64,000 nucleotides of DNA from Bugula neritina. Its lineage: Eukaryota > Animalia > Bryozoa. The notes below the pieces were generated by a model. It was given only the letters and a program-made list of their open reading frames with translations. It did no database searches and was not told the DNA's origin. A program made the translations under genes and the position numbers. Below are positions 600-59,130 of this stretch, one piece after another (the stretch's first letter is position 1; each line of letters opens with the position of its first letter). The stretch is from assembly GCA_964035545.1 (NCBI GenBank), contig OZ037770.1, positions 3,752,662 through 3,816,661 of the forward strand, written 5' to 3'.

Positions 600-2553
600 C
601 TGGATATAAATATAATTAGAGTATCACATACAGTAGTGACACACATGAGCCAAAGTTGAGAGTACATAAATAGTGGCATGCTTTCAAAATAAATAGTAAT
701 AGTTAATTTAGCTCTCAAGATGCCATATATGGTGCCTCCAATTTCTAGATCTGACAAAAAGCAGTAAAACACTCTCTTAATTGCAAAATCAATTTACATC
801 TTTATGCTAAAATTTAAATTTGTTACTTTTTAGGTATAACATGAACTAAGCAAACTTTTGTTTAAGACACCAGTTGTCATTTTTTCCAACAAAACATGTA
901 GTCAATTAGGTATGCTGGTTATTTTTACAAAATCATTCAGGATATTATTGAGATTACAAAATACGAGTTATTACACTGCATGATATTATATTATTGAAAA
1001 TAGTTTATATTTAGCATGAAGTTTTTACAAACCAATTATGTATTTGCAAGGCTGTAGAACGAAATAAAGACAATTTATGGGTATAATAAAATTTGTTTGC
1101 ATATAACACTTTGCTGATCTTAAAGTAGACCATGGTCTAATTTATGTAAACAGAATTTTCGAAACCAAACCATCTGCAAAACGTTTACCTAACTTTCAAA
1201 TACAATTGATCGCAATAGAAAATTATGGTAAATTCAACTTCAAGCTAAAAAGTCAGAAAAGAAATCATAATATAAAATGTTTGCCCCACTAGGATTACTC
1301 TATGGCTATATAGGAGTTACTGGGAAATCCCAATCTTTCATTCTAAGCAATTCTTTTGAACTCGATTTACAACTCCTTCAGTCTTCAGGTTCTCTTAGCC
1401 TCTCACCTCCTTAGAAGTACTGCTACTGCTACTACTACTTTTTACAAAAGGTCAAAAGAGCCCACAAAAATGCCTTTCCCGACGAGAATTCAAATGGCAG
1501 AAGTCGAGCTTTCAAGCATGCAAGGCAGGATAAACATTACACCACAAGGACTAATAAGTAATCTCTACACAACAGTTGCTTTCTAATCACGACAAGCAAT
1601 TGAACCCTAAACTAATAAAAGCAGAGCAGAAACTGTTATGGTGAAACCAAAACATCTAAGCATAGTAAAATGATGGAAGTGGAAAATTTGCATGCATTCA
1701 GATCAATTGATTTTTAAATCTAATTGAACTGCACATAACAATCTCAGTAAAAGAAGTTTTTAGAAACCGAAGTACTCTAATTGGTGGAAAAAGGAGAGCT
1801 GCTATAACTTATGTTCATCAGCTGATAAACTCACCTTGTCAGTTTTTGAGAAGAGTTGTTTTATCCTTGCATTGTTGGTTGGCTTTAGTTCAAGTTGTAC
1901 CAACTTCATGTCTTCATCATTCCCTTCATCAGGGTACAGATTGTCATCATCTTCAGAGAAATCACTCATATTATCATCATCAAATTCATCTGCAGTCATA
2001 TGGTTAGACAGATTATCGTCAACATTTGAAATCGTAGACTGCGTATCTCGCCTAGTCAACAGAAGCTGGAGCAAATAATTTTAAAAGAAACAATTAGACA
2101 TGATTTGCAGATAATTGTAAGGCAAAATTTGCAAACCCTATTATTTTACTAATAATGTGGGTTTGAAAATTTAGTCCTGTCTAAAAATTTTACCATTTGA
2201 TTTGTTCTGCTCTCTTCGAACTTTGAGCTCAGAAAGAAATTTCTTCAATTGATTTGTTTCTGCTTCAGACAAAGTCTCACCTGAGTAAAATAGACATAAT
2301 TAGTAACATTAAAACTGGATGAGAGGCATTAGAAAAATATGAGACATAATCAAAAGCTCATGTATCAAGTTTATACTTTATAAGTCAGCCTAGAAGTTCA
2401 ATAAAGTAGCTGTGTAGTGTGCTAATGTCCATCTAGCTGCTATTGAAATTCATCAATGCATGAAAAAACAGTAGATACGTTTTGATAGTGCAAGAAATTA
2501 TTTAAAAACATTTGGGCAAACCAATCAAAATTGAATCATAGTTGTAAACATAC

Positions 2554-4559
2554 ATGGATGAATTAGAGCACTGGGTATCTCTTCATCGTTACACAATATC
2601 TTTGAAGATCCATGACACTTCTTGACATTTGGTGGCAGTTGGTTTTTTGGAGAACGGAGACACCATTTAGGATGCAAAAGCTTTTTAGGGCAAGAAACCC
2701 CCAGTAGCATGCAGTGAGCACAGATGCAGGCAGTAACTGGTCGACTAGCAGTCTAAGTTCCCATCACATGTCTGAGAATGTTGTTTGTGGCTGAAATGAG
2801 TTTTTCCCACATCCTTGGAATGTGAGGAGCATCGGATGACACATAGAGTAAGACTCTTCTAGAATCATAATCATGTGTCAGCTGTGTGTATGTCTCATCT
2901 TGAAAGACATTAGCTCCATTTCTCTTCACCTTCATTGTAGCAAACTCTTTAGAAAACAGTTCTAGCAAACCAACTGTCATTTGATGGTAGACATGCTGCG
3001 GTAAAGCCAGGCCCTTAAACTTTATCTCAGTGTGAAGGGCCATTTCTTTTGGTGAGGTGTATGACACACCTTGATGTTCCTTAGCAAACTGAGGGATGAT
3101 GAAGCACGGTTCATGGACATGATTTTCCAGAGGGCCATACAACAAACGGAATGTTTTAAGCAAGCAAAGAGCAGTTTCAACATCATGGGAGCTTTTGAAT
3201 AATGTTTCCTTTGCGATCAAATATGTTAGAAGAGATTTCATCATCAAGCCTGTTGTTTTGAAGCAATTCACAGACTCTTCAAACTCTTCTATTTCAATTC
3301 TCAACCCTTCTTCGGAAATGTATGATTGGAATTGATCAACTCTTTTCTGCCAGATTTCTGGGTCATGATGGTACAAGACACATAGTAGTTTAGTAACTTC
3401 TGTGATCTTGTGAAATATGTATGGTTTGAGTGCTTCAATATTTTTATACCAGAGAACTTTACCGCAGTCATGCATGTATGTGAGAATCGTATCTAGCTGA
3501 TGTGGCTCAACCTCAATACCTTCTTTTCTCAATTCTAGCAGAATAAATGAAAAAGAGCTGAAACCTCTGGTTGAAGACAAAACTTTCTTATTCACTTCTT
3601 CCCAGATCAGTGGCAAAAGCTTTACAAAGTGCTGACTACTTAGAAGGAGCGAGCTCTTTATCATTTCAAACTCAGCATACTTGTCATCCTTTCCAATCTC
3701 ATAAATATCTTCACTGGCAAAAACCTTTCCATTTGATGAATTGAAATGCTGTATTTTCGAGAAATCTCCATCTGAACTTTTCTCTTCATTGAGAACTTCT
3801 TTGCACAGCTGTTCAGATATGCTAAGAAAGCTTTCTTTAAGCTGTTGAAACTGTTCACTTTGGAACTTATCCTTGTGTGTGAAGACAAGCTTAGGTGGGC
3901 CAAGAGTAGGATGGGAGAGATAGAGGTGAGACATGAAGTCAAAGGCCAACTTTCTGACAGCTTCTTTCTTTGTAAACTCATTTGAAATCTGATCATACTG
4001 CTTCATGTTGACTACAATTACCGGTACACAATTCTGTCTCAGTGTTAAATGGTATGTGATATGATAGACCTCCTGGCCTCCCATATCTATGAGACGAAGA
4101 GTTGTACCATCCACTTCCACCTCTTCCACATTAAACACCTTCGTCATCTCATCATGCTCTGCATTCGAACTTCTGTCAGTCAGAACTCTCTTCCTGTCAG
4201 TGCTCTGTAATGTTCGAATTAGACTGGTTTTACCTGCCATGGTGTTCCCCAACACTGCTATTGTAGCAAATGGAAGATTTCTACCAGCACCTTTAGCAAA
4301 GTCTGTGTAGTATTGTTGCACGGCATCTAGTCCTCTTTCACAGACTTCCAGTGGAGGAGATGTAAGAGCATTGCAACTAAATATATCCAGTGTACGAAGA
4401 CGTGTTAGTTGTAGTATCTCAGGTTTCAAGGATGTCATGGAACTGTTTTTGGATATATTCAGTATGTGCAGATTACTCAATGCACACACTGGAGATGGTA
4501 GTTTGGTGAATTTATTGAAAGATATGTCTAGTGTCTGTAACTTTTGTAGATTTTGTATC
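2554..4559 (-). CDS. 2006-nt exon: 3 terminal LRRs + Roc GTPase + COR, copy 1 (interrupted by TAG at 2753-2755)
   Basis: P-loop GNTMAGKTS, DMGGQ (G3), THKD (G4), COR motif LTYMHDCGKVLWY. Same length as the copy 2 exon. Confidence 0.88.
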
Positions 4560-5084: not shown

Positions 5085-7254
5085 CTCTCAGGTAGAGTAG
5101 ATAATTCACATATCCCCATATCCAACTCTTTAAGTGATGTGAGTGATAACACAACTTCTGGTATTGTGTTGAGAGGATTACATCTTATGTCTAGTTTCTC
5201 TAACTGAGTCAGCTGACACAGACTGTAATATAAAGTGTATGATATATATGCAGTCTGCATTACTATATTATTTTATACTATATTCACATTTTGTTTTCAA
5301 CCAGGTAAAACTATATACAACTCAACTACCAAGAAACTTACTGTAGCATTGTACATGCAGAGCATGAGAAGTTAACAGTTTATTATAATAGTATACAAGT
5401 ATTCAATTATTATATATACTCAGTACATGAATACTAATCAACTATACAACTTCTTACTATTATTTACATTTTTATATCACAAGAATATATAATGGCATAC
5501 CTTAAAATTGCGTTATTTTCACAATATTACAGACCATATTTTATATAGAGTTCAAAAAAATTGCATTTCACATATTCTTCAATCATACAATAACATACCA
5601 TAATACTACTTGGTAAGCATATAAAGATGTCAAATATAGAATGTTTCAAACAATACAAAAATATTGTGACACAAACCTCTCAAGTAGAGTAGATAATTTA
5701 CATATCCCCATATCCAACTCTTTAAGTGATGTGAGTGATGACACAACTTCTGGTACTGTGTTGAGAGGATTACTTCCTATGTATAGTTTCTCTAACTGAG
5801 TCAGCTGACATAGGCTGTAATATAAAGTGTATGATATATGTAGTCCTCATTACTATAATATTTTATACTATATTCACATTTTGTTTTCAACCAGGTAAAA
5901 CTATATACAACTCAACTACCAAGCAACTTATTGTAGCATTGTACATGCAGAGCATGAGAAGTTAACAGTTTATTATAATAGTATACAAGTATTCAATTAT
6001 TATATATACTCAGTGTGTGAATACTAATCAACTATACAACTGCTTACTATTATTTACATTCTATAGCACAAGAATATATAATGGCATACTTTAAATTATG
6101 TTATTTTCACAATATTACAGACCATATTTCATATAGAATTCAAAAAAATTGCATTTCACTCAATAATTTATCAATTATATAATGACATGCCCTAATTATA
6201 CTTGGTAAGAAATTATTTTATGATTTCAAGTATTAAATGCTTCAAGCAACACAAAAACTGTGACACACAAACCTCTCAGGTAGAGTAGATAATTTACAGT
6301 TCCCTATATTCAACTCTTTAAGTGATGTGAGTGTTGACACAACTTCTGGTACTGTGTTGAGAGGATTCCCTCCTATGTCTAGTTTCTCTAACTGAGTCAG
6401 CTGACATAGACTATATAAACATACAGTGTTTGATATATTTAGTTTCACTTATACAGAGTACAATTACTAGAGTTACTATAGATACCACATGATGATGAGG
6501 AATAAAAAACTATACTATCAATTTATTCCTTCTTAACAGATCTATTTAAAGTACCATATACTATCATAACGCTTGACTACTAGGTAGAAGTATAACAGTT
6601 TATTATAATAGTACACAAGTATTTATTTTCAAACTCACTGAATACAATATAATAAACGAGAAATTAATGCTTACTATTAAATACATTTTTATAGCACAAC
6701 AATATATAATGGCATATAACTTTAAAATTGTGTTATTCCCACAATACTATAAACCAATGCATATATATGTGTGTAACTTTAAAACATGGCATTTCAAATT
6801 TTTCAATTATACAATGGCATACCATAATAACACTTAAGGTAAGCATTTGAAGTTGTCACATATCGATTGTTTAAAACAAAACAAAAATTCTTACTATTAT
6901 TTACATTTTTATATCACAAGAATATATATTGGCATACTTAAAATTATGTTATTTTCACAATATTACAGACATTATTTCATATAGAATTAATAAATTGCAT
7001 ATTTCACATATTTTTCAATTTTATAATGACATAACCTAATTATACTTGGTAAGGAACTATTTTACGATTTCAAGTATTAAATGTTTCAAACAATACAAAA
7101 ACTGGGACAAACAAACCTCTTAGGGAGAGTAGATAATTCACAGCTACTCATATACAACTCTTTAAGTGATGTGAGTGATGACACAACCTTTGGTACTATC
7201 TTGAGAAGATTCCAGCTTATGTCTAGTTTCTCTAACTGAGTCAGCTTACATAAA
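5085..7254 (-). CDS. Array of four 138-nt LRR exons (two 23-aa LRRs each), copy 1
   Basis: Exons 7254-7117, 6410-6273, 5814-5677 and 5222-5085 are each flanked by yag and gtttgt and are phase 2-2. Consensus LCQLTQLEKLxIxxNPLNTVPEVVSSLTSLKELxMxxCxLSTLPER. The exon at 5677-5814 is not in the ORF track and was read by hand. Confidence 0.9.
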
Positions 7255-17765: not shown

Positions 17766-17767
<2 letters not shown>

Positions 17768-17832
<65 letters not shown>

Positions 17833-37685: not shown

Positions 37686-40600
37686 CTGGATATTAATATA
37701 GTTAGAGTATCACATACAGCAGTGACACACATGAGCCAAAGTTGAGAGTACATAGATAGTGGCATGCTTTCAAAATAAATAGTAATAGTTAATTTAGCTC
37801 TCAAGATGCCATATATGGTGCCTCAAATTTCTAGGTCTGACAAAAAGCAGTAAAGCATTCTCTCAATTGCAAAATCAATTTTACATCTTTATGCTAAAAT
37901 TTAAATTTGTTACATTTTAGTTATAACATGAACTAAGCAAACTCTTGTTTAAGACACCAGTTGTCATTTTTCCAACAAAACATGTAAATAGTCCATTAAG
38001 TATGCTGGTTATTGTTACAAAAGTCATTCAGGATATTATTGAGGTTACAAAATAAGAGTTATTACACTGCATGACTATATGTTGTTGAAAATAGCTTATA
38101 TTTAACTTTAAGTTTTTACAAACCAAGCATGTATTTGCAAGGCTGTAGAATTGAATAAGGACAATTTACGGCTCTAATAAAATTTGTTTGCATATTACAC
38201 TTTACTGGCTCAAAATAGACCAATATCTATTTTATGTAAACAAAGTTTCTAAAACCAAACCATCTGCAAAACATTCACTTAGCTTACAGATACAATCGAT
38301 TGCAGTGGAAAATTATAGTAAAATCAACTTTAAGCTTAAAGGTCACAAAAGAAATCATACTATAAATTGTTTGCCCCACTAAGATTACTCTATGACCATA
38401 TATATATGGAGTTACTGGGAAATCTCAACCCTTCCTCCTAAGCAATTCCTCTGATCTCTTTCTACAATTCCTTCAGCTTTCAGGTTCTCTTAGCCTTTGA
38501 CCTCCTTAGGAGTACTGCTATACTGTTACTATTACTTTTTAATAAAGGTCAAAAGAGCCCACAAAAAATACATTCCCTCTTACTGGAATTCAAATAGTAG
38601 AAGTCTAGCTTTCAGGCGTGCTAGCAAGATAAACATTACACTACAAGGACTAATGAGTAATCTCCACACAACAAATGCCTTCTAATCATGACAACCAATT
38701 GAACCCAAACTAATAAAAACAGAGCAGAAACTATGGCTAAACCAAAACCTACAAGTATAGTAAAATGATAGAATTTGAAAATGTGCATGCATTTAGATCA
38801 ATTGATTTTCAGATCCAATTGAACAACTGCACATGACAATCTAGTAAAAGGAGTTTTTAGAAACCGAAATACTCTACTAGGTGGAGAAAGGAGAGCTGCT
38901 ATTACTTGTGTTCATCAACTAATAAATTCACCTTTTCAGTGTTTGAAAAGAGTTGTTTTATCCTTGAGTTGGTTGTTGGCTTTAGTTCAAGTTGTATTAA
39001 CTTCATGTCTTCCTCATTCTCTTCATCAGGGTACAGATTGTCATCATCTTCAGAGAGATCACTCAGATCATCATCATTTAACTCATCTACAGTCACATCA
39101 TTAGACAGATTATTGTCAACATTTGAAACCATAAACTACATACCTCGCTTAGACAGGAGAAGAAGCAATTAATTTTAAAAGTCACAATCAGATATGATTT
39201 GTAGGGAAATGTAGGGCAAAATTTGCAAAGCCTATAATTTTACCAATACTGCTGGTATAAAAAATGAGCTCTGTCTAAAAAATTCACCATTTGATTTGCT
39301 CTGCTCTCTTCGAACTTTGAGCTCAGAAAGAAAGTTCTTCAATTGATTTGTTTCTGTTTCAGAAAAAGTCTCACCTGAACAATACAGACAGAATTAGTAA
39401 CATCAAAACTAGATGAGAGGCATTAGAAGAATATGAGACATAATCAAAAGCTCATGTATCAAGTTTATATTTTATAAGTCAGCCTAGAAGTTCATTAGAA
39501 TAGCTGTGTAATTTGCTAATGTCCATCTAGCTGCTATTAAAATTCATCAGTGCCTGGAAAAATAGTGGATACGTTTTGATAGTGCAACAAACTATTTAAA
39601 AACATTTGGGCAAAGCAATCAAAAGTGAATCATAGTTGTAAACATACATGGATGAATTAGAGCACTGGGTATCTCTTCATCGTTACACAATATCTTTGAA
39701 GATCCATGACACTTCTTGACATTTGGTGGCAGTTGGTTTTTTAGAGAACGGAAACACCATTTAGGATGCAAAAGCTTTTTAGGGATAGAAACCCCCAGTA
39801 GCATGCAGTGACCACAGATGCAGGCAGTAACTGGTCGACTAGCGGTCCAAGTTACCATGACATGTCTGAGAATGTTGTTTGTGGCTGAAATGAGTTTTTC
39901 CCACATCCTGGAAATGTGAGGACCATCGGATGAAACATAGAGTAAAACTCTTCTAGATTCATAGTCATGTGTCAGCTGCGTGTATGTCTCATCTTGATAG
40001 ACAGTTGCTCCATTTCTCTTCACCTTCATTGTAGCAAACTCTTTAGAAAACAGTTCTAGCAAACCAACTGTCATTTGGTGGTAGACATGCAGCGGTAAAG
40101 CTAGGCCCTTAAACTTTATCTCAGTGTGAAGGACCATATCCTTTGGTGAGGTGTATGACACACCGTGATGTTCCTTAGCGAACTGAGGGATGATGAAGTA
40201 CGGTTCATGGACATCATTTTCCAGAGGGCCAAATAACAAACGGAATGTTCTAAGCAAGCAAATAGCAGTTTCAACATCATGGGAGCTTTTGAATAATGTT
40301 TCCTTTGCGATCAAATATGTTAGAAGAGATTTCATCATCAAGCCTGTTGTTTTGAAGCAATTCACAGACTCTTTAAACTCTTCTGTTTCAATTCTCAACC
40401 CTTCTTCGGAAATGTATGATTGGAAGTGATCAACTCTTTTCTGCCAGATCTCTGGGTCATGATGATACAAGACACATAGTAGTTTGGTAACTTCTGTGAT
40501 CTTGTGAAATATGTATGGTTTGAGTGCATCGATATTTTTATACCAGAGAACTTTACCGCAGTCGTGCATGTATGTGAGAATGGTATCTAGCTGATGTGGC

Positions 40601-43600
40601 TCTACTTCAATGCCTTCTTTTGTCAATTCCAACAGAATCAACCAGAAAGAGCTAAATGCTCCGGTCAAAGACAAAACTTTCTCATTCACTTCTTCCCAGA
40701 TCAATGGCAAAAGCTTAACAAAGTGCTGACTACTTAGAAGAAGCGAGCTCTTTATCATTTCAAACTCAGCATACTGGTCATCCTTTCCAATCTCATAAAC
40801 ATCTCCACTGGCAAAAACCTTTCCATTTGATGAATTGAAATGCTGTATTTTCGAGAAATTTTCATCTGAACTTTTCTCTTCATTGAGAACTTCTTTGCAA
40901 AGCTGTTCAGATATGCTAAGAAAGCTTTCTTTAAGCTGTTGAAACTGTTCACTCTGAAACTTATCCTTGTGTGTGAAGACAAGCTTAGGTGGGCCAAGAG
41001 ACGGATGGGCTAGATAGAGGTGAGACATGAAGTCAAAGGCCAACTTTCTGACAGCCTCTTTCTTTGTAAACTCATTTGAAATCTGGTCATACTGCTCCAT
41101 GTTGACTACAATTACCGGTACACAATTCTGTCTCAGTGTTAAATGGTATGTGATATGGTAGACCTCCTGGCCTCCCATATCTATGAGACGAAGAGTTGTA
41201 TCATCCACCTCCACCTCTTCTACATTGAACACTTTTGTGGTCTCATCATACTCTGCATTCGAACTTCTGTCAGTCAGAACTCTCTTCCTGTCAGTGCTTT
41301 GCAATGTTCGAATTAGACTGGTTTTACCTGCCATGGTGTTCCCCAACACTGCTACTGTAGCAAATGGCAGATTTCTACCAGCACCCTTAGCCAAATCTGT
41401 GTAGTAGTGTCGCACAGCATCTAATCCTCTCCTACAGACTTCTAGTGGAGGAGATGTAAGAGCATTGCAACCATGTATATGCAGTGTATGGAGACGTGTT
41501 AGCTGTAGCATCTCAGGGTTCAAAGATGTCATGGACTCATTGTACAATATATCAAGTGTTTGCAGATTACTCAATGCACACACTGAAGATGGTAGACTGG
41601 TGAACTTATTGTTTGATATGTCTAGTGTCTGCAACTTTTGTAGATTCTGTATCCTAATAATATATTATATATTCACATTATCAGCACATGCTAGAGGTAA
41701 GTGAGATATAATTATAGCTGTCATAAATCTACAATGATAGTAAAACTATTATACACAGAATGTAGATGTATACGACGTGGCAATGGCTAAAGTGACCTTA
41801 TTATATAAAACCCTTTAAAGTAGTATTAGTCTAGAAGTAACCGCCCGAAAAGTGCTCAAAAAATTGGGTTAATACACTTTACTAGGTGGCCACTCAAAAA
41901 AAGTTGTTTCTAGATCAATATTCTGTGTTGATTCTGAATCTACAAACTCTAGAATTCTATCTCTACCCAAACTCAAGTTATTGCAAAAAACAAATCGGCA
42001 TTTTGGATGGGTGATAGAAAAAAATGTGGATTGTGCAAAATAGTATCCAATTTTATCAAGCTATCTTGAAGAAAAAATATTTGTTGAAGTATCAAAAATA
42101 ACTGCCTCTTACTTAGAATTCTATGCTAATACTAAATTTAAAGACTGTAAGAGGCTATCTCAAATTATAACCAAGTTGTTTATATAAACATATATAGTCT
42201 AGAAGTAACCTCCCAAAAAGTGCTCAAAAAGTTGGCTTATTACACTTTACTAAATGGCCACTCAAAAAAAGTTGTTTTTAGATCAAAATTTTGTGCTGAT
42301 TCTGAATCTACAATTTTTAGAATTCTATCTCTACCCAAACTCTAGTTATTGCAAAAAACAAATCGACGTTTTAGATGGGTGATAAAAAGAAATGTAGATT
42401 GTGCAAAATAGTATCCAATTTTATCAAGCTATCTTGAAGAAAAAATATTTGCTGAAATATAAAAAATAATTGCCTCTTACTTAGAATTCTATGCTGATAT
42501 TGAATTTAAAAACTGCAAGACGCTATCTCAAATTAAAAATCAAGTTGTTTATATAAACACATGTGTTTGTTATGAATCGACATATTGCATGCGGCATAAG
42601 CATGCAGAATAATTGTATGACCAAGCTATTTATACAAAAATAAAAGCAAAGTCATGCTGATGTGTGAAAAAACTATATTTATAAAATCATTGTACAAAAT
42701 AAATGTTGAAATGAATAAATATTGAAATATTTTGAGCTCAGCCCAAGTGAACCATTTGCTAGTCTGTCGGTAGCCGTTAAACGTCTGCAAAAATCAACAA
42801 GATTCTGTAAAATTATTTAGAGGAACAGAAGCATGAAAGATTATCAAAATCAAATTGGTTGCAAGCAGCAAAATATATAACAAATGTCTAAAAATAGTGC
42901 TTTATTATAAAAAAGTATTCTCGCCATCATTGTCATTGCCATCAGTCTCATCAGCTCCTTCCCCAATATAGAGCTTCTTTTCAGACAATCCTTACATTGA
43001 CAAACATCAGTGCATGCACTGCATTTGAGATTTCTGACATCCACATCTTGATATGTTGCAGCTGGTCTTACAGGAGCAGTTTAAACTTTGCAATATACAT
43101 GTTCAGGTGCGAAAGCTTGAATCATCTACTTTATATTTATGTTGCCATGATTCTCAACAATCTTTTCATAATGTTCTGGGGTGGTGCATCAATATAAGCT
43201 GTTGTCACTCTTCTTCAAATAGCTGCCTGATAATTTGCTCTTTTTACATGCAAATTTAATTCATCTTTTGTTGGAGGCAAACTCTATTAAGTTATTTTAG
43301 ATGGTGAACGAAATACAGTGTATCATACATTATCTATATATTATATGGATTTCCTGCTCCATAAAGCTTATAGACAAATTGTTCTATTTCAGCCGCTGTA
43401 ATGGCTTACAGCTTAAAATACTTCCCAAGGTGTTCAAAGTTTCCCATACATTATGGATATTTTCTCAAAAAAGAGTAGGCTGTGCGATATCCTTTTTCAT
43501 AAAAAGCACTATAGTCAAATAAAAACCTGTTGAAGCATGAAATCTACTAAGTGCTGCACACAACTACGGTTTGGATTTACTTGCTGCAATGTTGACATCC

Positions 43601-46600
43601 AAATATCTAATATGATTATGGTTTCTTCCCAGATAGACGCTATTTTTATTTTGTTACCATATATATTAATATTACCTATATAACTGAGGAATTGATTGCT
43701 AATATGCTAATAGCTATATGTAGTAATACATTAATAATAGACACTATCTTTAATGAATACTTATTAGCAAAATATATTTTCAAACAACAGACAAGATGTA
43801 TAAAATAATATACAAAATTAATAAGTTAATGCAAATCAAAAGAATTTATTTATGTGTTAAATAACAAGCAATTAATCCAAGTTTATTTAAATATGCATAT
43901 GTTTCAATAATATTAAAATAAGTTGCACATGAAAATACATTTTACCAAAATAAATAACTAGCGTCTAAGTAGAAAATTTAGTCTAGCCTCTTTCTGGCAT
44001 GACACCATGATTACCACACCCGTGAAAAAATATAATTGGTAAGAAGGTGATGTTTTGCAAATAGCGAGACTTAGGATGAAAAGTTGAGATTTGATTATTA
44101 TACGTGAAATTATGATGTTTATAAGATATTTTGCATGTAAAAAAGTTTGTGTATCTGCTCCCTCATGATCTAATTGTAAGCATTTGAGTTGTGCTTTCTT
44201 AGGAATTCTACCATGTTTGGTAAAATTGTAGCTGAAAGCAGTTATTTTTGGTATGCATCAACTATAATAACAATATTGTTCTCTAATATATAATATTTTT
44301 ACTCCATGTTTCACACAAAAATGAACCAGTCTCAAACTCAGCTTATTTTAATTTGGGGATAAGAAATTATTATTTTTGTAACAAATGGCACACATGAAAA
44401 AAGTACATGCCTATGATCTTTGAATGAGGCAGCCCAAGATCATTTTTCTAATGCATGGGTGGTCTAAATATAACCATATAATATATTAAAAATTATAGGA
44501 AAGCTTTAGGGTATTTCTTCTGTAACTATAACTGAGATAAATTGGCTCTAGAGTCATTATATCAAGATAGTATAAAAATATGCATTCTAACCAATAGCAT
44601 TGTTTTAAAAACCAAATTGCTTATGTATAATATATAGTTCAGCTTAAATTTATTGGCAAAGCTCAATTATACATTTTTAAAATATTATCTTCCTGAGTCC
44701 AGATCAACCAGCTCATGCTTCTCATTACTTTTTTGTAAAAGTAGTTATTATAATAAAAATGGTGAAGAAAATCATTATCAGACACAACTTTACTTATAAT
44801 TCGCCTTTTTTATAGCCGATCAATAATAATGTTTGCCTTATAACTAATAAACCCATTCCTTTGCTTGTTTTCGTCCATATAATCCACTTATTTCAGATTT
44901 TTTCACAAGAAAATCACTAGAAATAAACTCAGAGAAGTGAAAAACACATCTATGATTAACTGCAAAAGTTTTTGCTTGTATATAATATAATAAACTAGCT
45001 TCAATAATTTCAAGATAATAAATTAAATATTATTTAATGGATTTGGACAAAGTTGTGGGGAAACAACTCCTGTAACATTTTAAAGAGTTTTGTGACTAAC
45101 CGGGTGGATAGAAAAATTTAAAGTTTTTATAGAAGAAAAGTGAAAAAAGTATCTATAACTATCAGCAAATTTATTTTGCTTATATAAAATAAAATAGCTT
45201 GAATAATTCCGAAATATTTAGCCAATTCACAAAAACATTAGGAGAAAACAACTCCTGATTAATTTTAAAAGTTTAAAGCGTTTTTGTGGCCAACTGGGTG
45301 CACAGAACAGTCTGGAGTTTTCACAGATTAATTAGGACCCTTCAAACTTTGTATTTCTAAAGAAATTGCGTGGCCACCCCTCAAAGTGTAATGAGTGAAA
45401 GATAATTGGAGGTTACTTCTAGACTATATGGGATATAATTGTAATTCTACAATTTTCATTTATTGATATTCTCACAATTTTCAAGTGTTATTTTTGATAT
45501 TTCAAATCATTTACAACACTACAATTACAATGAATTGGTAAAAGATATTAAAAAAGTAATTTAAGTGTCACAATTCATAATGCTTCCGTAGACAATGTTG
45601 TTTTATATAACATGTAGTTGAGTATAACTGCTTAGACTGATATTTTATTAGATATGTGTGGTATATATTATAAATATGTACTATATATAATACAGTTATA
45701 ATCAAACTATATAGAGGCAAAGTTATTATGCATGAGTCTGCATGAAGTATTACAGAAAGTATGCCAGAGAAAAACACAATACTCAGCATTACACTTTAAC
45801 AAACAATGCTAAGAAATACACATTAATAGTTGTTGAACAGAAAGTTCAATTTTTATCAACTTTGCTATATGATGAACTACAAGTTCAGGGTACTATTGCA
45901 CTGTCTTGCAAGGATATTACGTGTGCATTCTTTAAAGGACAGTTTTGTAAATTATAAGGGAAAGCGAATTATTGAACATATTATAGATATGAACAACTTG
46001 TTATGTATATACCATTTCTAGCTTTACAGAGGAGAGGTATGGACACTATAATGTAGTTTAATTGTGTTGACTATTTTGCTAAAAATTGTTTTAAATAGTA
46101 ACTCTATTGTGACACACAAACCTCTCAGGTGGAGTAGATAATTCACACTGCATCATATTCAACTCTTTAAGTGATGTGAGTGATGACACAACTTCTGGTA
46201 CTGTGTTGAGAGGATTGTCTTTTATGTATAGTTTTTCTAACTGAGTTAGCTGACATAGACTATAAACATACAGTGTTTGATATATTTAGTTTCGCCTATT
46301 CAGGATACAATTACTAGAGTTACTATAACTACCACATGATTATGAGGGATAAAAAACTATACTATCAATTTATTCCTTCATAATAGATCTATATAATGTA
46401 ACATACTATCATAACGCTTGACTACTAGGTAAAAGTATAACAGTTTATTATAATAGTACACAAGTATTCATTTTTAAACTCAGTGAATACTACGTAATAA
46501 ACTAGAAATTATTGCTTACTATTAATTACATTTTTATAGCACAACAATATATAATAGCATAAAACCTTAAAATTGCATTATTCCCAAATATTTTAAACCA

Positions 46601-49600
46601 TTGCATATATGTGTGTGTAACTTCAAAACATTGCACATCATATTTTTCAATTATACAATGGCATATACCATAATAACACTTGGTAAGCATATATAAAGTT
46701 GTCAAATAATGAATGTTTTAAACAATACAAAATCTGTGACAAACAAACCTCTTAGGTAGAGTAGATAATTCACAGCCTCCCAAATCCAACACTTTAAGTG
46801 ATGTGAATGATGACACAACTTCTGGTACTGTGTTGAGAAGATTATCTCCTATGTATAGTATCTCTAACTGAGTCAGCTGGCACAGACTGTAATATATAGT
46901 ATATGATATACATGTAGTCTGCATTACTATAATATTCTATACTATATTCACATTTTGTTTTCAACCAGATAAAACTATATACAACTCAACTACCAAGCAA
47001 CTTATTGTAGCATTGTACATGCAGAGCATGAGAAGTTAACAGTTTATTATAATAGTATACAAGTATTCAATTATTATATATACTCAGTGTGTGAATACTA
47101 ATCAACTATACAACTGCTTACTATTATTTACATTTTTATAGCACAAGAATATATTATAATGATATACCTCAAATTATGTTATTTTCACAATATTACAGAC
47201 CATATTTTATATAGAATTAATAAATTGCATTTCACATATTTTTCAATCATATAATGACATAACCTAATTGTACTTGGTGAGGAACTATTTTCTGATTTCA
47301 AGTATTAAATGTTTCAAACAATACAAAAACTGTGACAAACAAACCTCTTAGGGAGAGTAGATAATTCACAGCTACTCATATTCAACTCTTTAAGTGATGT
47401 GAGTGATGACACAACTTCTGGTACTGTGTTGAGAGGATTGTTTCCTATGTATAGTTTCTCTAACTGAGTCAGCTGACACAGACTATAAACATACAGTGTT
47501 TGATATATTTAGTTACACATATTATGCAGAGTACAATTACTAGAGTTACTATAACTAGCACATGATTATGAAGGATAAAAAACTATACTATCAATTTATT
47601 TCTTCATAACAGATCTATATAATGTAACATACTACCATAACGCTTGACTACTAGGTAAAAATATAACAGTTTATTATAATAGTACACAAGTATTTATTTT
47701 TAAACTCAGTGAATACTATAACTAATAAACTAGAAATTATTGCTTACTATTTATTACATTTTCATAGCACAGCAATATATAATGGCATATAACCTTAAAA
47801 TTGTGTTATTCCCACAACATTATAAACTATTGCATATATTATTTGTGTAACTTCAATACATTGCATTTCATATTTTTCAATTATATAATAATTGACATAC
47901 CGTAATAACACTTGGTATAAGCATATAAAGATGTCAATTATTGAAGGTTTCAAACAATAAAAAGAATTAGCAATACAAACCTCTCAGGTAGAGTAGATAA
48001 TTTACAGCCCCCCATTTGCAACTCTTTAAGTAATGTGAATGATGACACAACTTCTGGCACTGTGTTGAGAGGATTATATGCTATGCCTAGCGTCTCTAAC
48101 TGAGTCAGCTGACATAGACTGTAATATAAAGTGTATGATATATATGTAGTCCTCATTACTATAATATTTTATACTATATTCACATTTTGTTTTCAACCAG
48201 GTAAAACTATATACAACTTAGCTACCAAGCATCTTATTGCAGCATTGTACATGCAGAGCATGAGAAGTTAACAGTTTATTATAATAGTATACAAGTATTC
48301 AATTATTATATATACTCAGTGTGTGAATACTAATCAACTCTACAACTGCTTACTATTATTTACATTTTTATAGCACAACAATATATAATGACATACCTTA
48401 AATTACGTTATTTTCACAATATTACAGACCATATTTCATATAGAATTAATAAATTGCATTTCACATGTTTTTCAATCATATAATGACATAACCTAATTAT
48501 ACTTGGTAGGAAACTATTTCATGATTTCAAGTATTAAATGTTTCAAACAATACAAAAACTGTGACAAACAAACCTCTTAGGGAGAGTAGATAATTCACAG
48601 CTACTCATATACAACTCTTTAAGTGATGTGAGTGATGACACAACCTTTGGTACTATCTTGAGAGGATTCCAGCTTATGTCTAGTTTCTCTAACTTAGTCA
48701 GCTTACATAAACTGTAATATAAAGTGTGTAATATATGCATATATTACACACTTTATATTACAGTCTAGACTACATGTAGTCTCTTGTATCATATATTGAC
48801 ATATTCTGTACTCAGCTATAATGTAAAATATGTAGCAAACAATTTTGTTGAGACAGGGTAAGCAGCAAAAAAATGCTATTATGCCATGTTATAGGTGTAA
48901 TGGGTGCCCTGTGTATAATTGAGTGATTAGATGTATATGTATATAGACATCCTGTTTGTTTAATAGATAAGGGCTACTCTACAATGTAATGCTAATATAT
49001 AGTATGATTTATAATAATAAATGGTATAATTTGTTATAGCTAATCTGACACAAATTAGCATGTATTTAATACTCTGAAAATATTTTATTTTTAAGTATAT
49101 GGCTACATATAATATGCTTATATATATTATGTATTGCAAACAAAAACCTTCTGTATAATCCTGCATGTATACATGTACTGCAATAATATTATGTTACTTC
49201 TGTATTCAACTACATAAAACATGTTTTAATTTATGATAAGATGTGTAACACTACAGACAGTTTCCCACTGTCTAGTTTCTACAACTCGTTCAGCTGGTAG
49301 AGATACAATGTTATACATATTACTATAGCTTTATATAGTGCATGATTACATCATGAGTAAGAATAGACTTCAGCATTGACTCAGACACATACATCGTGGG
49401 TGATAATTATCACAACTAAACTCATTTAACATTTACACAGCTATCATAATAGATACTTACTTGTCTAGACTTGCTCTGTCAGTCAGGCCAGAAACACATA
49501 GACACAGGGCTTTACCAGCAACCTCTCCAATGTTGTTTGGAATATTCCCTATCAGTCTAAGATCTGTGATATGATAACTCCCAATTTCATGTTTCACCTC

Positions 49601-50509
49601 AGCAGCAGTATATGATTTGGTATTAGCATACATAGCATACTGTACATCCCACCAGTCTACAGGAGGCTGACCAGAATGTCTGAACCAGATTCTCATATTC
49701 TCTGTAACATCATACAGTGACAGTGTGATTATTACACTGTGCTAGCAGGTGATGTCTGTCATTCTGAAACCTGTTACATACATCTATTATTTGCTGTGTG
49801 TAAGACACTACAGCTATATATAGACATGCCTGGCTACTTTAGGTTCATGAAAGTAAAATCTGCAAATTTAAAATGATCTCTAATTCCCTGAAAACAACTG
49901 CTCTGTGTAAAATCTTTGAAATTATGCTGCTTCGGTTTCAATAAAGACCCTTTTAAATAATGTTGACATATATTATACATTGTATAAATATATAAAGACA
50001 TTTTAAAATCGATGAGTTTAAAGCAGACAAAAACACGCTGAATTATCATTTCACATCCAAGCATGCACAAAAAAGGTACAAATAGCAACATCAAGTTAAA
50101 AGTTTCTATATCCGACACTGCATACTTTCTACCCCATGAGTCACACAGCCAATGTTTACAGGATGATTCTAGAAACACATGGACTAGTATATAGTTAGAA
50201 CACTTTCTGATAGTGAGATATATAGAACTGATTATTTGAATGTTACTCATATTTTTACTATGGAAACAAGCAAACCATAGAAAAGTTTTTGAAAACTCTT
50301 GTCTCAATAGGTAAAACTTTTACTAGTCTTGCTAAAATGAGATTCATACCCATGCAGAGCTGGTTTTGTTCATACCTATATTCAAATAAATGCTAAGTAT
50401 TGTCTAAATACAAATAGTAACAACCAGTAGATAACTTTGGTTGAAAGCAAAACTTGTAACTTGGCTTTTCAACAAAAATTTATTAAAACAACTCACCATC
50501 TGTTGCCAT
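35328..50509 (-). CDS. LRR-Roc-COR-(pseudo)caspase fusion protein, copy 2, apparently intact (15 coding exons, 1356 aa)
   Basis: Exons 50509-50497, 49701-49461, 48711-48574, 48118-47981, 47482-47345, 46886-46749, 46259-46122, 41653-39648, 39374-39288, 39086-38932, 37685-37515, 36990-36768, 36578-36348, 36002-35899, 35477-35328 (TAA). Lengths sum to 4071 nt, every junction is GT-AG and phase-compatible, and I found no internal stop. Confidence 0.85.
39648..41653 (-). CDS. 2006-nt exon: 3 terminal LRRs + Roc GTPase + COR, copy 2
   Basis: ORF 39619-41634 with GNTMAGKTS, DMGGQ, THKD, LTYMHDCGKVLWY and a C-terminal CICGHC. Confidence 0.9.
41827..45426 (-). mobile_element. Degenerate Academ-like DNA transposon (3600 bp) in an intron of copy 2 only
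   Basis: Perfect 16-bp TIRs TAGTCTAGAAGTAACC / GGTTACTTCTAGACTA. 3-bp TSD TAT (41824-41826, 45427-45429); the empty site in copy 1 near 4722-4730 reads GTAGTATGG. Minus-strand remnants ALSRFHASTG, LPPTKDELNLHVKRANYQAAI and NCSCKTSCNISRCGCQK..CTDVCQCKDC resemble the Academ transposase C-terminus. Confidence 0.8.
46122..48711 (-). CDS. Array of five 138-nt LRR exons, copy 2
   Basis: Exons 48711-48574, 48118-47981, 47482-47345, 46886-46749 and 46259-46122 are all phase 2-2 and open. Two of them are missing from the ORF track and were read by hand. Confidence 0.9.
49461..49701 (-). CDS. N-terminal cap exon of the ROCO-caspase gene, copy 2
   Basis: MRIWFRHSGQPP...SLD; donor AA|gtaagt; homologous to 8008-8230. 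Confidence 0.7.
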
Positions 50510-51482
50510 GGTTACTAAAGTTTTTACTGCTGATTTATTTCAATTCTGTAAATCTGAAGGTTGGTAGCTCCACCTGTACAACAGGTATAAAATAAAAAGT
50601 ATTATATAAATCATTGCTACATAGAATATACCAATGTACATGCCCATTTCTATAAGGAGTAGATGTATAATCAGTCAAGAAAAATAAACTTAAGTAAACC
50701 ATAGGTATTTACTTATGTATGTATTTATGTATGTAGGTATTTAGGTATGTACGGAGTTAGGAATGTAATACGTCTATAGGTATGTATGTATTTATGTATG
50801 TATGTATTCATGTATGTAGGTATTTAGGTGTGTAGGTATTTAAGTATGCAGCTATGTGGGTATTTAGGAATGTATGTATTTAGGTATATGTATATATATT
50901 TAGGTGTGTATGTATTTAGGTATGTAGGTATTTAGGTATGTAGGTATCTGGGTGGGTATGTAAGTCTGCAAACTCTTACTGACACAGTATACAGCTGCCT
51001 ACTCGGTCACCTTAATTGTAGGAGGGAACTAGGTAACTCATCTGGCTGGACTGTGTGACAACAGATATGACTTTGAATCAATACTTTGTATATCTCTGTC
51101 TCACTGCAATATGAATAATTTACAAATTGTACTGAAGTCTTAAAATGAGTGTAATAAAAATATTCATACGCTGAATTATCATTTTATATCCATGCATGCA
51201 CAAAAAAAGTACAAATATCAAAATCAAGTTAAATCTTTCTATATCTGACACTGCATACTTCCTACCCTATAATCACTTTATATAATATTATATGCTCAAC
51301 TAACAATTGATGAAATTTGCAGACCTAAAAAATAATATGTTGGCTGCGATATTATATGTATCTGCCAATATTATGTACTTTAAATAGTAAACTATTTAAT
51401 AGTCAACAGTTAATTCTATACCAATTCTAATAATTTGGTCAATTTTGAACAATTAAGTAGAAAACATAACTCCTTGTATTAT

Positions 51483-56974: not shown

Positions 56975-59130
56975 TAAAAAAATAAAAGAGAAAAACAAAG
57001 AATATGCCCAATCTCGGACAAAGGCCATTTCTTTTAGCATGAAAAAATATAAGAGAAGAAAAAAAGAATATCATTGCGCTAGGTTAAATAATAGTACAGT
57101 AATATACAGAAATATTGTAATAAGTTGTAATATACTGATCCACACTGTAATATACTGATACATGCTTTAATACACTGTAACATACTGTAACAGACTGTAA
57201 TATGCTAAAAAATACTGCAATGCAACATAATACACTGCAATATACGACAATATAATGTAGTACACTGCAACAAACTGTCAGACAATGTAATATAATCTTG
57301 CTTAATTCTCTGTAAGAAACTGTAAGACACGTCAGTACAATGTAATAAACTGTAATATTATATAGTGTAATACATTATAATAAACTGTAATAAACTGTAA
57401 TAAACTGTAATAAACTATAATAAACTGTAATAAACAGTAATATACTGAAATATACTGAAATATACACTAATACCTTGTTATACACTGCAATACCCTGTAA
57501 TACACTGTAATACATTTTACTAGACAACTCCAAAACTCCTCAAACTATGCACTTCTAATCATTTTCCCCAGAACCATTAGAATCAGCAGCTATGCAGACT
57601 CAGCTACATATAATGTATGTGATATGTTGATCACATTTAATTTGTATTATACTTGCATTTATACAATGCATAACTTTGTGTAGCTCTTAGTGACTGTGAG
57701 GCAGGTTCACTAGAAGTAAACTATAACTAAAATCTCATAAAGAGTTTATAATATTATATAAAACCTTGAAACTCACTTGGCATGATTAGTGTGAGCTGTT
57801 GCTTGCAAGTTTCTACCTGCTATAGCTGATTACCAGCTGTCATCTGCTAATTGCCAGTTGCCTTGTGCTGATAGCCAGTTGCCATTTGCTAGTTTCTAGT
57901 TGTAGTTTCTACACCTCAATGATCCTTCAGCCTCAACTTGCAATGTTGAAGTAAAACTCAACTGCCTATTGATTTGTTACTCCTCCTGTTACTATGCAGC
58001 TATAACAAAACCTTATTTACTAACTAATGTTTATAATGAGTGCATAGCAATATACACAACAGCTATTACTTTGTATTAGAAATTATCACTGTGCTCAGCT
58101 CAGCTATTGTGTATTTTATGGTATTGTTTGGATTTGCCAGTTCAAACAAAGAAATCTTTAAAAGCAGAAATAGTGATCAATAATTGTAATCAATGAGGAG
58201 TGCTGCATTTTGTTCTCTTTGTAAAAAAGTGATGCATTGATTAGAGTTAACGTAATAAAATTAAATGTACATATTATAGTTAATTATTTGCTTTTTTCCT
58301 TTACACTGTTTAAATAACTACAAATATTAGCAATGCTATAAGATACAGTAAGTGAAAAAGTTACTATATAACACAAAGCACAGTGTGTAAAAGTTGTTAC
58401 TGAAAGAAGTTACAGAGAAAGTTACTAAAAAGCTGCAAAGCCATTTACCTCTGCGTCAGCTTTCCAAGTAACTTGATGAGGGCCATCTACATTTCTGTCA
58501 CAATTTATTTAAACTTTGCAAATAACTCTTTTAAAGATTACAACTAAATTTATGTTTCGGAATATATCATAGAGATAAAATCTGAACAATATGCCTCCAA
58601 CAGCCCATTATGTCTTGTCATTACAGTATTTCACAAACTTATTTTATATATTTCTGTTAATGTGACATTCATTATAGTCAATGAACTGACTGTTGGTAAA
58701 CTGTGCAGAGAGAATATTATAATAAATAATTTGTATAGTCAAACTTTACAGCTTCATGAATAACTTATATATGATACTTGCGTTATTATTGAGTTGCCAA
58801 GTATAAAGCAACATGAACAAGATGTGTTATATAATATTTTAGCAGCCATATTGTGTATATTATTGTAGTTAAAAATAATAATATTATATTAGTATGTAGT
58901 ACAATTTTAAAGGAGTATTGAAATATAAGCCAGTGAGCATCTACCCTAACTTTTGTTTAACTTTGCCAGTTCAAACAAAAACCTTTTTTGAACTGGCAAT
59001 ACACAATTATGTTAATATTGAATTGTGTTTTCACAGGAGAAAGACTATTGAACAAATTACATACCACTGCTTTTTTCCTTGTTCAGTTTGAATTGTTTGC
59101 AAGAACTGATTTAGAGCCAACACTGCTTGG

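What the first reader, a model, noticed from the sequence alone, without database searches (positions are those of the whole stretch)
46122..48711. Modular 138-nt symmetric LRR exon cassettes with shuffled intron types and variable copy number
Seen: every LRR exon is exactly 138 nt and phase 2-2, so any can be skipped, duplicated or swapped without a frameshift. The introns are repeats of two types: A begins on the + strand with CTGTAATATAAAGTGTATGAT, and B begins CTATAAACATACAGTGTTTG. Left to right, the order is B-A-B-A in copy 2 (5 exons) and A-A-B in copy 1 (4 exons). Some exons look chimeric: 47345-47482 has a YIGNN first repeat but the MSSCELSTLPK end of the first cassette. Established: exon-shuffled LRR-ROCO genes were proposed as pathogen receptors in the brown alga Ectocarpus. 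Inference: unequal crossing-over or conversion between ~600-bp exon+intron cassettes, possibly with alternative splicing, generates receptor diversity in an animal.
Basis: partly seen in the sequence, partly recalled or inferred. Interest (0 to 1): 0.86.

Follow-up and report, generated by a model that had tools for sequence, protein, structure and literature searches.

The report
Shuffled LRR exon cassettes, bryozoan-type ROCO genes
Two neighbouring copies of a candidate intracellular sensor gene (leucine-rich repeats, GTPase switch, caspase) build their sensor arm from interchangeable 138-base exons that have been duplicated, deleted, recombined and copied between genes, as in some known immune-receptor families; whether cells also mix them by splicing could not be tested.

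Summary
All nine LRR exons in the window (five in copy 2, four in copy 1, minus strand) are exactly 138 nt, AG/GT-flanked and phase 2-2, and each encodes two 23-residue LRRs. Introns fall into types A and B in the stated order.

The pattern holds family-wide. In 20 further loci, 160 of 163 such exons are intact. Arrays hold 2 to at least 16 cassettes.

The germline shuffling reading is supported:
- Exon 47345-47482 is a recombinant, the scar of a two-cassette unequal crossover (p=0.001).
- Copy 2's extra exon lies in a 655-bp tract about 98% identical to cassettes in genes at least 220 kb away, while the flanks are about 90% identical (p=9e-13).
- Copy 1 lacks 381 bp there.
- LRR exon synonymous divergence stays near 8% whatever the divergence of the Roc-COR exon (1-37%).
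- Seven concave-face codons vary 13 times more than flanking introns.

This fits unequal crossover plus short-tract gene conversion plus diversifying selection.

The closest analogues are brown-algal ROCO LRR exon shuffling and zebrafish NLR gene conversion. I class it as a new variant of a known kind. The scan noted sister arrays elsewhere in this genome (s1-487178, s1-453594).

The parts
48574..48711 (-). Copy 2, LRR cassette exon E1 (first cassette; HV signature DSW-YSSE)
   Evidence: 138 nt, AG/GT, phase 2-2. It is 98.6% identical to copy 1 exon 7117-7254.
48119..48573 (-). Copy 2, intron type A (455 nt) between E1 and E2
   Evidence: 90-95% identical to the other A introns. Falls in family cluster Q.
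47981..48118 (-). Copy 2, cassette exon E2 (GAY-QGGK). This exon is absent from copy 1.
   Evidence: It is 138/138 identical to exons in loci L001 (two copies) and L006.
47721..48375 (-). Cassette-sized gene-conversion-like tract around E2
   Evidence: 97.7% identical to L006 8890-9540. Measured over 47761-48350, there are 12/592 differences inside the tract against 79/654 outside it (p=9e-13), and a 290-nt perfect run. Where it can be aligned to copy 1, identity is only 85%.
47483..47980 (-). Copy 2, intron type B (498 nt) between E2 and E3
   Evidence: 87-89% identical to the other B introns. Falls in cluster S.
47345..47482 (-). Copy 2, cassette exon E3. It is a recombinant (chimeric) exon, with the breakpoint between exon nt 101 and 108 (about 47375-47382).
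   Evidence: Informative-site pattern and max chi-square permutation p=0.0011. It lies at the junction of the two-cassette duplication 46108-47508 versus 47331-48736.
46887..47344 (-). Copy 2, intron type A (458 nt) between E3 and E4
46749..46886 (-). Copy 2, cassette exon E4
46260..46748 (-). Copy 2, intron type B (489 nt) between E4 and E5
46122..46259 (-). Copy 2, cassette exon E5 (last cassette)
41654..46121 (-). Copy 2, long intron between the last cassette and the large exon. It holds a dispersed repeat (about 43704-45430) and a 368-bp x2 tandem repeat (41827-42559).
   Evidence: Acceptor read directly in the sequence. The repeat has at least 523 first-look candidates genome-wide. Tandem repeat from TRF.
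39640..41653 (-). Copy 2, large exon encoding the last LRRs plus Roc GTPase plus COR. The 3' end is approximate.
   Evidence: Open frame continuous with phase 2. Pfam Roc scores 32.3 bits against a cut-off of 27. PDB matches to LRRK2 and C. tepidum Roco.
7117..7254 (-). Copy 1, cassette exon E1
6411..7116 (-). Copy 1, hybrid 706-nt intron: B type (6411 to about 6886) joined to the donor-side 227 nt of an A intron. It marks the missing 381 bp that include the E2-type exon.
6273..6410 (-). Copy 1, cassette exon
5815..6272 (-). Copy 1, intron type A (458 nt)
5677..5814 (-). Copy 1, cassette exon
5223..5676 (-). Copy 1, intron type A (454 nt)
5085..5222 (-). Copy 1, last cassette exon
2527..4539 (-). 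Copy 1, large LRR-Roc-COR exon with one in-frame TAG. This copy is probably truncated or a pseudogene.

Best explanation
The region is the sensor arm of two tandem paralogues of a large LRR-Roc-COR(-caspase) gene family. Each 138-nt, phase 2-2 exon encodes two 23-residue LRRs and sits in a cassette of about 570-630 bp (exon plus a homologous intron).

The arrays evolve in the germline by four processes.
1. Unequal crossing-over, or tandem duplication, of one to eight cassettes. Breakpoints fall in introns or inside exons. Exon 47345-47482 is such a scar.
2. Simple deletions. Copy 1 lacks 381 bp that include one exon.
3. Gene conversion between cassettes of different genes. Within one intron type the tract is cassette-sized (47721-48375). 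Between intron types it is confined to the exon and its short conserved intron ends. This keeps the LRR framework nearly uniform across the family and redistributes variants.
4. Diversifying selection on seven solvent-exposed codons of the LxxLxLxxN/C strands: codons 11, 13, 14, 34, 36, 37 and 39.

Shown: the anatomy, the recombinant exon, the conversion tract, the decoupling of exon and gene divergence, and the hypervariability.

Inferred: that the proteins are ligand sensors (for pathogens or allorecognition) that signal through the GTPase to a caspase, and that all cassettes are spliced in.
For: - Exon anatomy holds for 9 of 9 exons in the window and 160 of 163 in the sampled family.
- Arrays range from 2 to at least 16 cassettes, with differing orders of eight homologous intron types.
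- The chimeric exon has p=0.0011.
- The two-cassette duplication is 46108-47508 versus 47331-48736.
- The conversion tract has 12/592 differences inside against 79/654 outside, p=9e-13. Its exon is 100% identical to exons in L001 and L006. The Roc-COR exons of the same genes are only 93.6-94.3% identical.
- The 381-bp gap in copy 1 is shown.
- Four-fold-site divergence in Roc-COR ranges 0.01-0.37 (mean 0.255). In the LRR exon framework it is flat at about 0.077, with r=0.06 between the two.
- Among cassettes whose two flanking introns differ by 3% or less, segregating sites are 1.07% in introns, 2.9% at framework four-fold sites (p=0.018) and 13.9% in HV codons (p=7e-26).
- 22 of 27 derived framework variants between such sibling exons already exist in at least 3 other exons, against 17% expected for random point mutation (p=4e-13).
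- pN/pS is 1.94 at HV codons and 0.51 in the framework.
- The same di-LRR exon design (141 nt, phase 2-2) is present in Watersipora subatra.
Against: - Family-wide tests for recombination inside the exon were inconclusive. PHI was significant only at w=50. The correlation between the two exon halves was no lower than for random site partitions.
- No extant donor more than 95% identical was found for one strongly diverged sibling exon. Whole-exon replacement therefore does not explain every case. Recurrent mutation with parallel selection could mimic part of the shared-variant signal.
- The synonymous-site excess in sibling exons rests on 7 sites.
- There are no RNA data, so exon inclusion is unproven.
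- Copy 1 carries a stop codon in its large exon, so part of the difference between the copies may reflect decay.
- Whether the extra exon was gained in copy 2 or lost in copy 1 is not resolved.
Confidence: 0.8

Rival explanations
1. Beyond germline evolution, the symmetric cassettes are used combinatorially. Under this reading, alternative splicing (skipping or selecting cassettes) or somatic rearrangement or conversion gives each cell or colony a different LRR arm, in the manner of Dscam or VLR.
For: - Phase 2-2 symmetry makes any skip frame-neutral.
- All cassettes share near-identical splice-site contexts.
- Brown-algal ROCO LRR exons are reported to be alternatively spliced (PMC11378527).
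- A perfect 52-nt palindrome overlies the acceptor of the first cassette in both copies.
Against: - No RNA or multi-individual data could be obtained.
- The cassettes are ordinary exons inside complete genes. They are not splice-site-less donor cassettes flanking an incomplete gene.
- Germline processes already account for the variation seen.
- Symmetric phase is a by-product of tandem exon duplication and does not itself show regulated skipping.
Confidence: 0.12
2. Plain duplication and divergence without gene conversion. Cassettes arise by tandem duplication. Exon uniformity reflects purifying selection, including on synonymous sites needed for splicing of short exons. HV differences reflect point mutation plus positive selection only.
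For: - Exon distance correlates with flanking-intron distance within intron types P, R and S (r=0.23-0.70).
- No close donor was found for L012 exon 8915.
- The half-exon Mantel test shows no dependence on distance.
Against: - The sharp 655-bp tract is about 98% identical between genes whose coding exons are about 94% identical.
- Short-term change at four-fold sites in exons is no slower than in introns, yet the long-term plateau is 3 times lower than in Roc-COR.
- 81% of new framework differences are variants already in the family pool.
- Exon changes within one recently duplicated block are overdispersed: 1, 2, 6 and 12.
Confidence: 0.07
3. Assembly artefact. The difference in cassette number and order between the two copies would reflect collapse or mis-joining of near-identical repeats.
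For: Repeated units of about 600 bp are a known assembly hazard.
Against: - Cassettes differ by about 10%, which is easily resolved.
- The copy 1 junction is a clean 381-bp gap in otherwise collinear sequence.
- The same architecture recurs in 20 loci and in another species' chromosome-level assembly.
Confidence: 0.02

Closest known systems
Brown-algal (Ectocarpus and kelp) LRR-ROCO genes with shuffled LRR exons (Zambounis et al. 2012, PMC3341825; Teng et al. 2024, PMC11378527)
   Same: - LRR-Roc-COR architecture.
- Repeats encoded by equal-length symmetric exons.
- Repeat number varies between clustered paralogues.
- Positive selection on the concave face.
- Proposed role as candidate immune receptors.
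   Different: - Here one exon carries two LRRs (138 nt, phase 2-2). In the algae one exon carries one LRR (72 nt).
- The introns here are themselves conserved repeats of 420-500 nt.
- Inactivated or inverted intronic LRR exons are rare here: 3 of 163 defective and one 40-nt inverted fragment.
- A caspase is encoded downstream.
- The host is an animal lineage, so the similarity is presumably convergent in gene structure.
- Alternative splicing was not tested here.
Zebrafish NLR-B30.2 family (Howe et al. 2016, PMC4852459)
   Same: - Large clustered family.
- One big NTPase exon, with each LRR unit on its own exon.
- LRR exon number varies between genes.
- Gene conversion inferred from low synonymous divergence of sensor exons against high divergence of the NTPase exon.
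   Different: - The switch there is a NACHT ATPase. Here it is a Roc-COR GTPase.
- In zebrafish the hypervariable, conversion-shuffled module is B30.2 and the LRRs are 'not particularly variable'. Here the LRR exons carry the hypervariability.
Lamprey and hagfish variable lymphocyte receptors (own knowledge; cited in PMC3341825 and PMC4852459)
   Same: LRR modules with hypervariable concave-face residues are recombined by gene-conversion-like copying.
   Different: VLR assembly is somatic and draws on non-spliced donor cassettes around an incomplete gene. Here the cassettes are canonical exons of complete genes, and only germline exchange is shown.
Metazoan ROCO proteins MFHAS1/MASL1 and LRRK2, and the bacterial Roco of Chlorobium tepidum
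   Same: LRR followed by a Roc GTPase and a COR-like region. Roc aligns to LRRK2 (E=2e-10) and to C. tepidum Roco (E=2e-9).
   Different: Those are single-copy or few-copy genes. They lack hypervariable cassette arrays and a C-terminal caspase.

Membership tests
ROCO (Roc-COR GTPase) proteins | Roc (Ras of complex) GTPase domain with a P-loop | tested here: met
   Pfam PF08477 Roc scores 32.3 bits against a cut-off of 27 for copy 2, and 32.1 bits for copy 1. P-loop and DxxGQ motifs are visible in the translation. PDB matches to LRRK2 and C. tepidum Roco.
ROCO (Roc-COR GTPase) proteins | COR domain immediately C-terminal of Roc | tested here: inconclusive
   Only a sub-threshold COR-A hit in copy 1 (19.2 bits against a cut-off of 35.3). 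The roughly 450 residues after Roc are conserved in 118 relatives at E<=1e-30. No fold was made.
Exon-shuffled LRR-ROCO genes (brown-algal type) | Each repeat unit on its own exon of constant length and symmetric phase | tested here: met
   9 of 9 exons in the window and 160 of 163 in the family. The unit here is a di-LRR of 138 nt, whereas the algal unit is one LRR of 72 nt (PMC3341825).
Exon-shuffled LRR-ROCO genes (brown-algal type) | Variable exon number and order between paralogues, with evidence of exon exchange | tested here: met
   Arrays of 2 to at least 16 cassettes with different intron-type orders. Recombinant exon. Conversion tract.
Exon-shuffled LRR-ROCO genes (brown-algal type) | Diversifying selection on concave-face LRR residues | tested here: met
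   HV codons 11, 13, 14, 34, 36, 37 and 39 occupy the x positions of LxxLxLxxN/C. pN/pS is 1.94 there against 0.51 in the framework. They vary 13 times more than flanking introns. Mapping to the concave face rests on the known LRR consensus. No model was built here.
Exon-shuffled LRR-ROCO genes (brown-algal type) | Alternative splicing of LRR exons (Teng et al. 2024) | not testable with these tools
Exon-shuffled LRR-ROCO genes (brown-algal type) | Frequent inactivated or reverse-strand LRR exons inside introns | tested here: not met
   Both-strand BLAST of 21 loci found 3 defective exons among 163, one 40-nt reverse-strand fragment (L014 2131-2170) and a 30-nt inverted acceptor remnant.
VLR-type somatic LRR cassette assembly | Incomplete germline gene plus flanking donor cassettes that lack splice sites | tested here: not met
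   The cassettes are AG/GT exons, in frame with the downstream Roc-COR exon.
VLR-type somatic LRR cassette assembly | Somatic rearrangement differing between cells | not testable with these tools
   No reads and no multi-tissue data.
Dscam-type mutually exclusive exon arrays | Docking and selector complementary intron elements, with one exon chosen per transcript | not tested
   Only the conserved intron ends were inspected. No RNA data.

The most novel reading that the evidence does not exclude
The cassette arrays may be more than a germline record of shuffling. They could be a working diversity generator. Cassettes might be combinatorially spliced, or somatically converted or rearranged, so that colonies or cells express individual LRR arms. 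Alternatively, an exon-targeted templated mutational process could act on the seven binding-face codons. That would explain exons differing by about 10% between introns that differ by about 1%.
Probability: 0.1. Interest if true: 0.9.

Novelty: new variant of a known kind. Interest (0 to 1): 0.62.

Why it matters
Bryozoans are colonial animals whose immune and allorecognition genes are almost unknown. The data show the following.

- There is a large clustered family: at least 158 Roc-COR exon candidates and at least 350 LRR cassette candidates.
- The sensor arm is built from interchangeable exons.
- The ligand-face codons turn over 13 times faster than adjacent introns.
- The framework is kept uniform by exchange between genes.

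This is the genomic signature of plant R genes, fish NLRs and brown-algal ROCOs. Here it is attached to a GTPase switch and a caspase. It offers a testable candidate for pathogen sensing or self/non-self discrimination outside the NLR and TLR paradigms. It is also a clean natural example of exon-limited gene conversion combined with diversifying selection.

Tried and rejected
Splicing, allelic variation and assembly support are therefore untested.
- Exons were analysed one by one, by reference.
- PHI test on 148 unique exons. It was not significant at w=10-30 (p=0.24-1.0) and was significant only at w=50 (p=0.002). I rate it inconclusive, because clustered hypervariable sites inflate short-range incompatibility.
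- Mantel test between the two exon halves against random site partitions. There was no difference (r about 0.17-0.19 against 0.18-0.20), so family-wide mosaicism within exons is not demonstrated.
- Donor search for the strongly diverged sibling exon L012 8915-9052. The best other exon in the genome is 95% identical, so whole-exon replacement from an extant donor is rejected for that case.
- Search for an alternative haplotype contig using copy 2's long intron. It found a dispersed repeat with at least 523 candidates and no haplotig.
- Literature search for bryozoan ROCO or LRR receptors found nothing specific.
- Pseudogene decay as the explanation of HV variation is rejected: 98% of exons keep their frame and splice sites.
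- The idea that intron types A and B are unrelated sequences is rejected. All eight intron types align significantly (z=3.4-35) and share conserved donor ends of about 45 nt and acceptor ends of about 25 nt.


Full report
**What is there.** The window (G000:C6:3752662-3816661) contains a segmental duplication, 95-18782 versus 37186-60174. Identity is 90.6% over the gene body, 93% just upstream of the LRR arrays and 97-98.6% further upstream.

Each copy carries a minus-strand gene. Its large exon encodes terminal LRRs, a Roc GTPase and a COR-like region. Pfam Roc scores 32.3 and 32.1 bits against a cut-off of 27. The Roc region aligns to LRRK2 and to Chlorobium tepidum Roco in the PDB. Relatives found by HMMER continue into a caspase, and tblastn places caspase-like exons at about 35884-37673.

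Upstream in gene sense lie the LRR cassette exons of the finding. There are five in copy 2 (48574, 47981, 47345, 46749, 46122; each runs +137) and four in copy 1 (7117, 6273, 5677, 5085).

**Check of the observation.** All nine exons are exactly 138 nt with AG and GT flanks. They are open only in the frame that leaves 1 nt 5' and 2 nt 3', which is phase 2-2. Each encodes 46 residues, or two 23-residue LRRs. The last cassette's two trailing bases join in frame to the first base of the large exon at 41653.

The introns fall into two types.
- Type A is 454-458 nt and 90-95% identical within the type.
- Type B is 489-706 nt and 87-89% identical within the type.
- A versus B is 66-69%. They share the donor-side roughly 300 nt at about 80% and differ mainly in the acceptor-side roughly 170 nt.

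Two refinements apply. Copy 1's 'B' intron (6411-7116) is a B intron fused to the donor-side 227 nt of an A intron.

**The family.** A single exon finds at least 350 first-look candidates in the genome. The 40 that were scored are 91-95% identical. The Roc-COR exon finds at least 158 candidates. Of these, 66 were scored and 60 are free of stops.

I fetched 20 array loci. Of 163 exon matches, 160 are exactly 138 nt, AG/GT-flanked and open in the same phase. One has an in-frame 9-nt deletion, one is 140 nt, and one has lost its donor. Arrays hold from 2 to at least 16 cassettes with a period of about 560-640 bp.

All types are significantly alignable to one another (z=3.4-35). They share a conserved donor end of about 45 nt and an acceptor end of about 25 nt. 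The order of types differs from gene to gene. In the A/B subfamily there are both Q-S and Q-Q-S units.

A homologue in the bryozoan Watersipora subatra (GCA_963576615.1) has the same design: 141-nt AG/GT exons, phase 2-2, the same position within the repeat, and variation at the same residues. Its introns are kilobases long. The symmetric di-LRR exon is therefore old, and the compact conserved intron shell is the local feature. I did not establish the species of the window itself. An earlier scan note calls it a bryozoan, which the Watersipora relative supports.

**Evidence for unequal crossing-over.** In copy 2, 46108-47508 aligns to 47331-48736 at 90%. This is a two-cassette tandem duplication whose end lies at the exons.

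Exon 47345-47482 sits at the junction. It matches exon 46122 in the upstream B intron and in exon nt 1-101. It matches exon 48574 from exon nt 108 on and in the downstream A intron. Within the exon, the 23 informative sites give a maximum chi-square with permutation p=0.0011. This is the pattern expected if an unequal crossover between the first and last cassette exons created the duplication.

Sister arrays show fresher events of the same kind:
- single-cassette duplications at 99-99.8% identity (L001, L010, L013, L014);
- two-cassette duplications (L006, L010);
- four- and eight-cassette (5 kb) duplications in L016.

**Evidence for conversion between genes.** Exon 47981-48118 is 138/138 identical to two exons in L001 and one in L006, which lie at least 220 kb away.

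The identity extends over about 47721-48375. That stretch is 97.7% identical to L006. Measured over 47761-48350 there are 12 differences in 592 nt, with a 290-nt perfect run. The flanks, which remain alignable, carry 79 differences in 654 nt (Fisher p=9e-13). The longest identical run in 2000 permutations was 174 nt.

The Roc-COR exons of the same genes are only 93.6-94.3% identical. The tract is therefore younger than the genes.

Copy 1 lacks exactly the inner 381 bp of this tract (copy 2 47966-48346). That segment is the exon plus 15 nt of intron B plus 228 nt of intron A. Where copy 1 can be aligned inside the tract, it is only 85% identical to copy 2, against about 92% outside.

So the five-versus-four difference is tied to a cassette-sized exchange with a distant paralogue. 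I cannot say whether copy 2 regained the exon by conversion or copy 1 lost it by deletion and copy 2 was separately converted.

**Exon and intron histories are decoupled.** Across cassette pairs, framework third-position divergence of the exons stays at about 0.07-0.09. This holds whether the adjoining introns are of the same type (distance 0.10-0.18) or of different types (0.35-0.6).

Between 16 genes, four-fold-site divergence in the Roc-COR exon ranges from 0.01 to 0.37 (mean 0.255). That of the LRR exon framework is flat (mean 0.077), and the two are uncorrelated (r=0.06). Howe et al. used the same argument to infer gene conversion in the zebrafish NLR-B30.2 family (PMC4852459).

On a short time scale the pattern reverses. 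I took 12 independent groups of cassettes whose two flanking introns differ by 3% or less. The share of segregating sites is:
- introns: 1.07%
- framework codon positions 1 and 2: 1.2%
- framework four-fold sites: 2.9% (p=0.018)
- the seven hypervariable codons: 13.9% (p=7e-26)

In individual pairs the differences are confined to the exon. For example, L009 5504 versus L012 8915 shows 14 differences in 138 nt, against 5 and 6 in the 450 nt on either side. Within one recently duplicated block, four exons carry 1, 2, 6 and 12 changes. That looks episodic, not clock-like.

Of 27 derived framework variants that distinguish such sibling exons, 22 already occur in at least three other exons of the family. 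Random point mutation would give 17% (p=4e-13).

A fast rise to a low plateau, with variants drawn from a common pool, is what gene conversion among exons predicts. Synonymous constraint does not predict it. Between intron types only the exon and its short conserved ends offer homology, which would confine the tracts there.

Within intron types P, R and S, exon distance does follow intron distance (r=0.23-0.70). Recent history is therefore by whole cassettes.

**Diversifying selection.** Over 160 exons, residues 11, 13, 14, 34, 36, 37 and 39 have entropies of 1.9-3.3 bits. Most others are below 0.7. These are the x positions of LxxLxLxxN/C. In solved LRR proteins those positions face the concave sheet; this is established knowledge and was not modelled here.

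Nucleotide diversity at these codons is highest at first and second positions (0.57 and 0.38, against 0.25 at third positions). pN/pS is 1.94 there, against 0.51 for the framework.

**What remains open.**
- Alternative splicing, allelic copy-number variation and somatic change could not be examined.
- Family-wide tests for mosaicism inside the exon were inconclusive.
- No extant donor explains one strongly diverged exon. Point mutation under strong selection, or multiple micro-tracts, must also contribute.
- Copy 1 has an in-frame TAG in its large exon and may be decaying.

**Comparison and verdict.** The closest described systems are as follows.
- The brown-algal LRR-ROCO genes have 72-nt single-LRR exons, shuffling, positive selection and alternative splicing (PMC3341825, PMC11378527).
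- The zebrafish NLR-B30.2 family has LRR units on single exons, variable number and conversion of sensor exons (PMC4852459).

The present case works like these. It differs in four ways: the unit is two LRRs per 138-nt, phase 2-2 exon; the introns form a conserved shell of about 440 nt; the switch is a Roc-COR GTPase; and a caspase lies downstream. It does not meet the defining features of VLR-type assembly.

I found no paper describing it in bryozoans. The scan had already noted sister arrays in this genome (s1-487178, s1-453594, s1-453883).

I rate it a new variant of a known kind. The splicing and somatic part is untested.

Noticed in passing
window 48712-48763 and 7255-7306: A perfect 52-nt palindrome (26+26 nt, no spacer) lies at the acceptor of the first LRR cassette exon in both copies. 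With one mismatch it extends 4 nt into the exon. It is an inverted copy of the conserved acceptor flank. In pre-mRNA it could fold over the 3' splice site. It was not found in the 20 other sampled loci.
   Followed up: partly
window 2527-4539 (copy 1 large exon): There is one in-frame TAG about 93 codons before the end of the Roc-COR exon. Copy 1 may be truncated or a young pseudogene, although its four LRR exons are intact.
   Followed up: partly
window 43704-45430: A dispersed repeat sits inside copy 2's last LRR intron. It is about 1.7 kb, has at least 523 first-look candidates genome-wide and is 85-95% identical to copies on many contigs. Together with a 368-bp x2 tandem repeat (41827-42559) it accounts for most of this intron's extra roughly 4 kb compared with the copy 1 counterpart.
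   Followed up: partly
window 8456-16055 versus 49819-57435: The region upstream of both genes is GC-rich (42-48%). It is 98.5% identical between the two copies, while the gene bodies are about 90-93% identical. Roc-COR identity between paralogues also swings from 81% to 99% in 200-nt windows. This suggests either a mosaic history, with conversion also acting in the large exon, or a young element shared by both copies.
   Followed up: no
window 20812-21637: A 38-bp tandem repeat with 21.7 copies at 97% identity lies between the two gene copies.
   Followed up: no
L016 836-4994 versus 5844-10000 (G000:C6:5032000-5041999): A 5-kb unit of eight cassettes is duplicated in tandem at 98.2% identity, and inside it a four-cassette period is visible. 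This array has at least 16 cassettes, or at least 32 LRRs.
   Followed up: partly
L021 (Watersipora subatra OY755161.1, 46755364-46804666): The homologous gene has 141-nt phase 2-2 di-LRR exons separated by introns of 1.2-9 kb. Their immediate flanks are identical. The large exon has the same 671 codons as in the window.
   Followed up: partly
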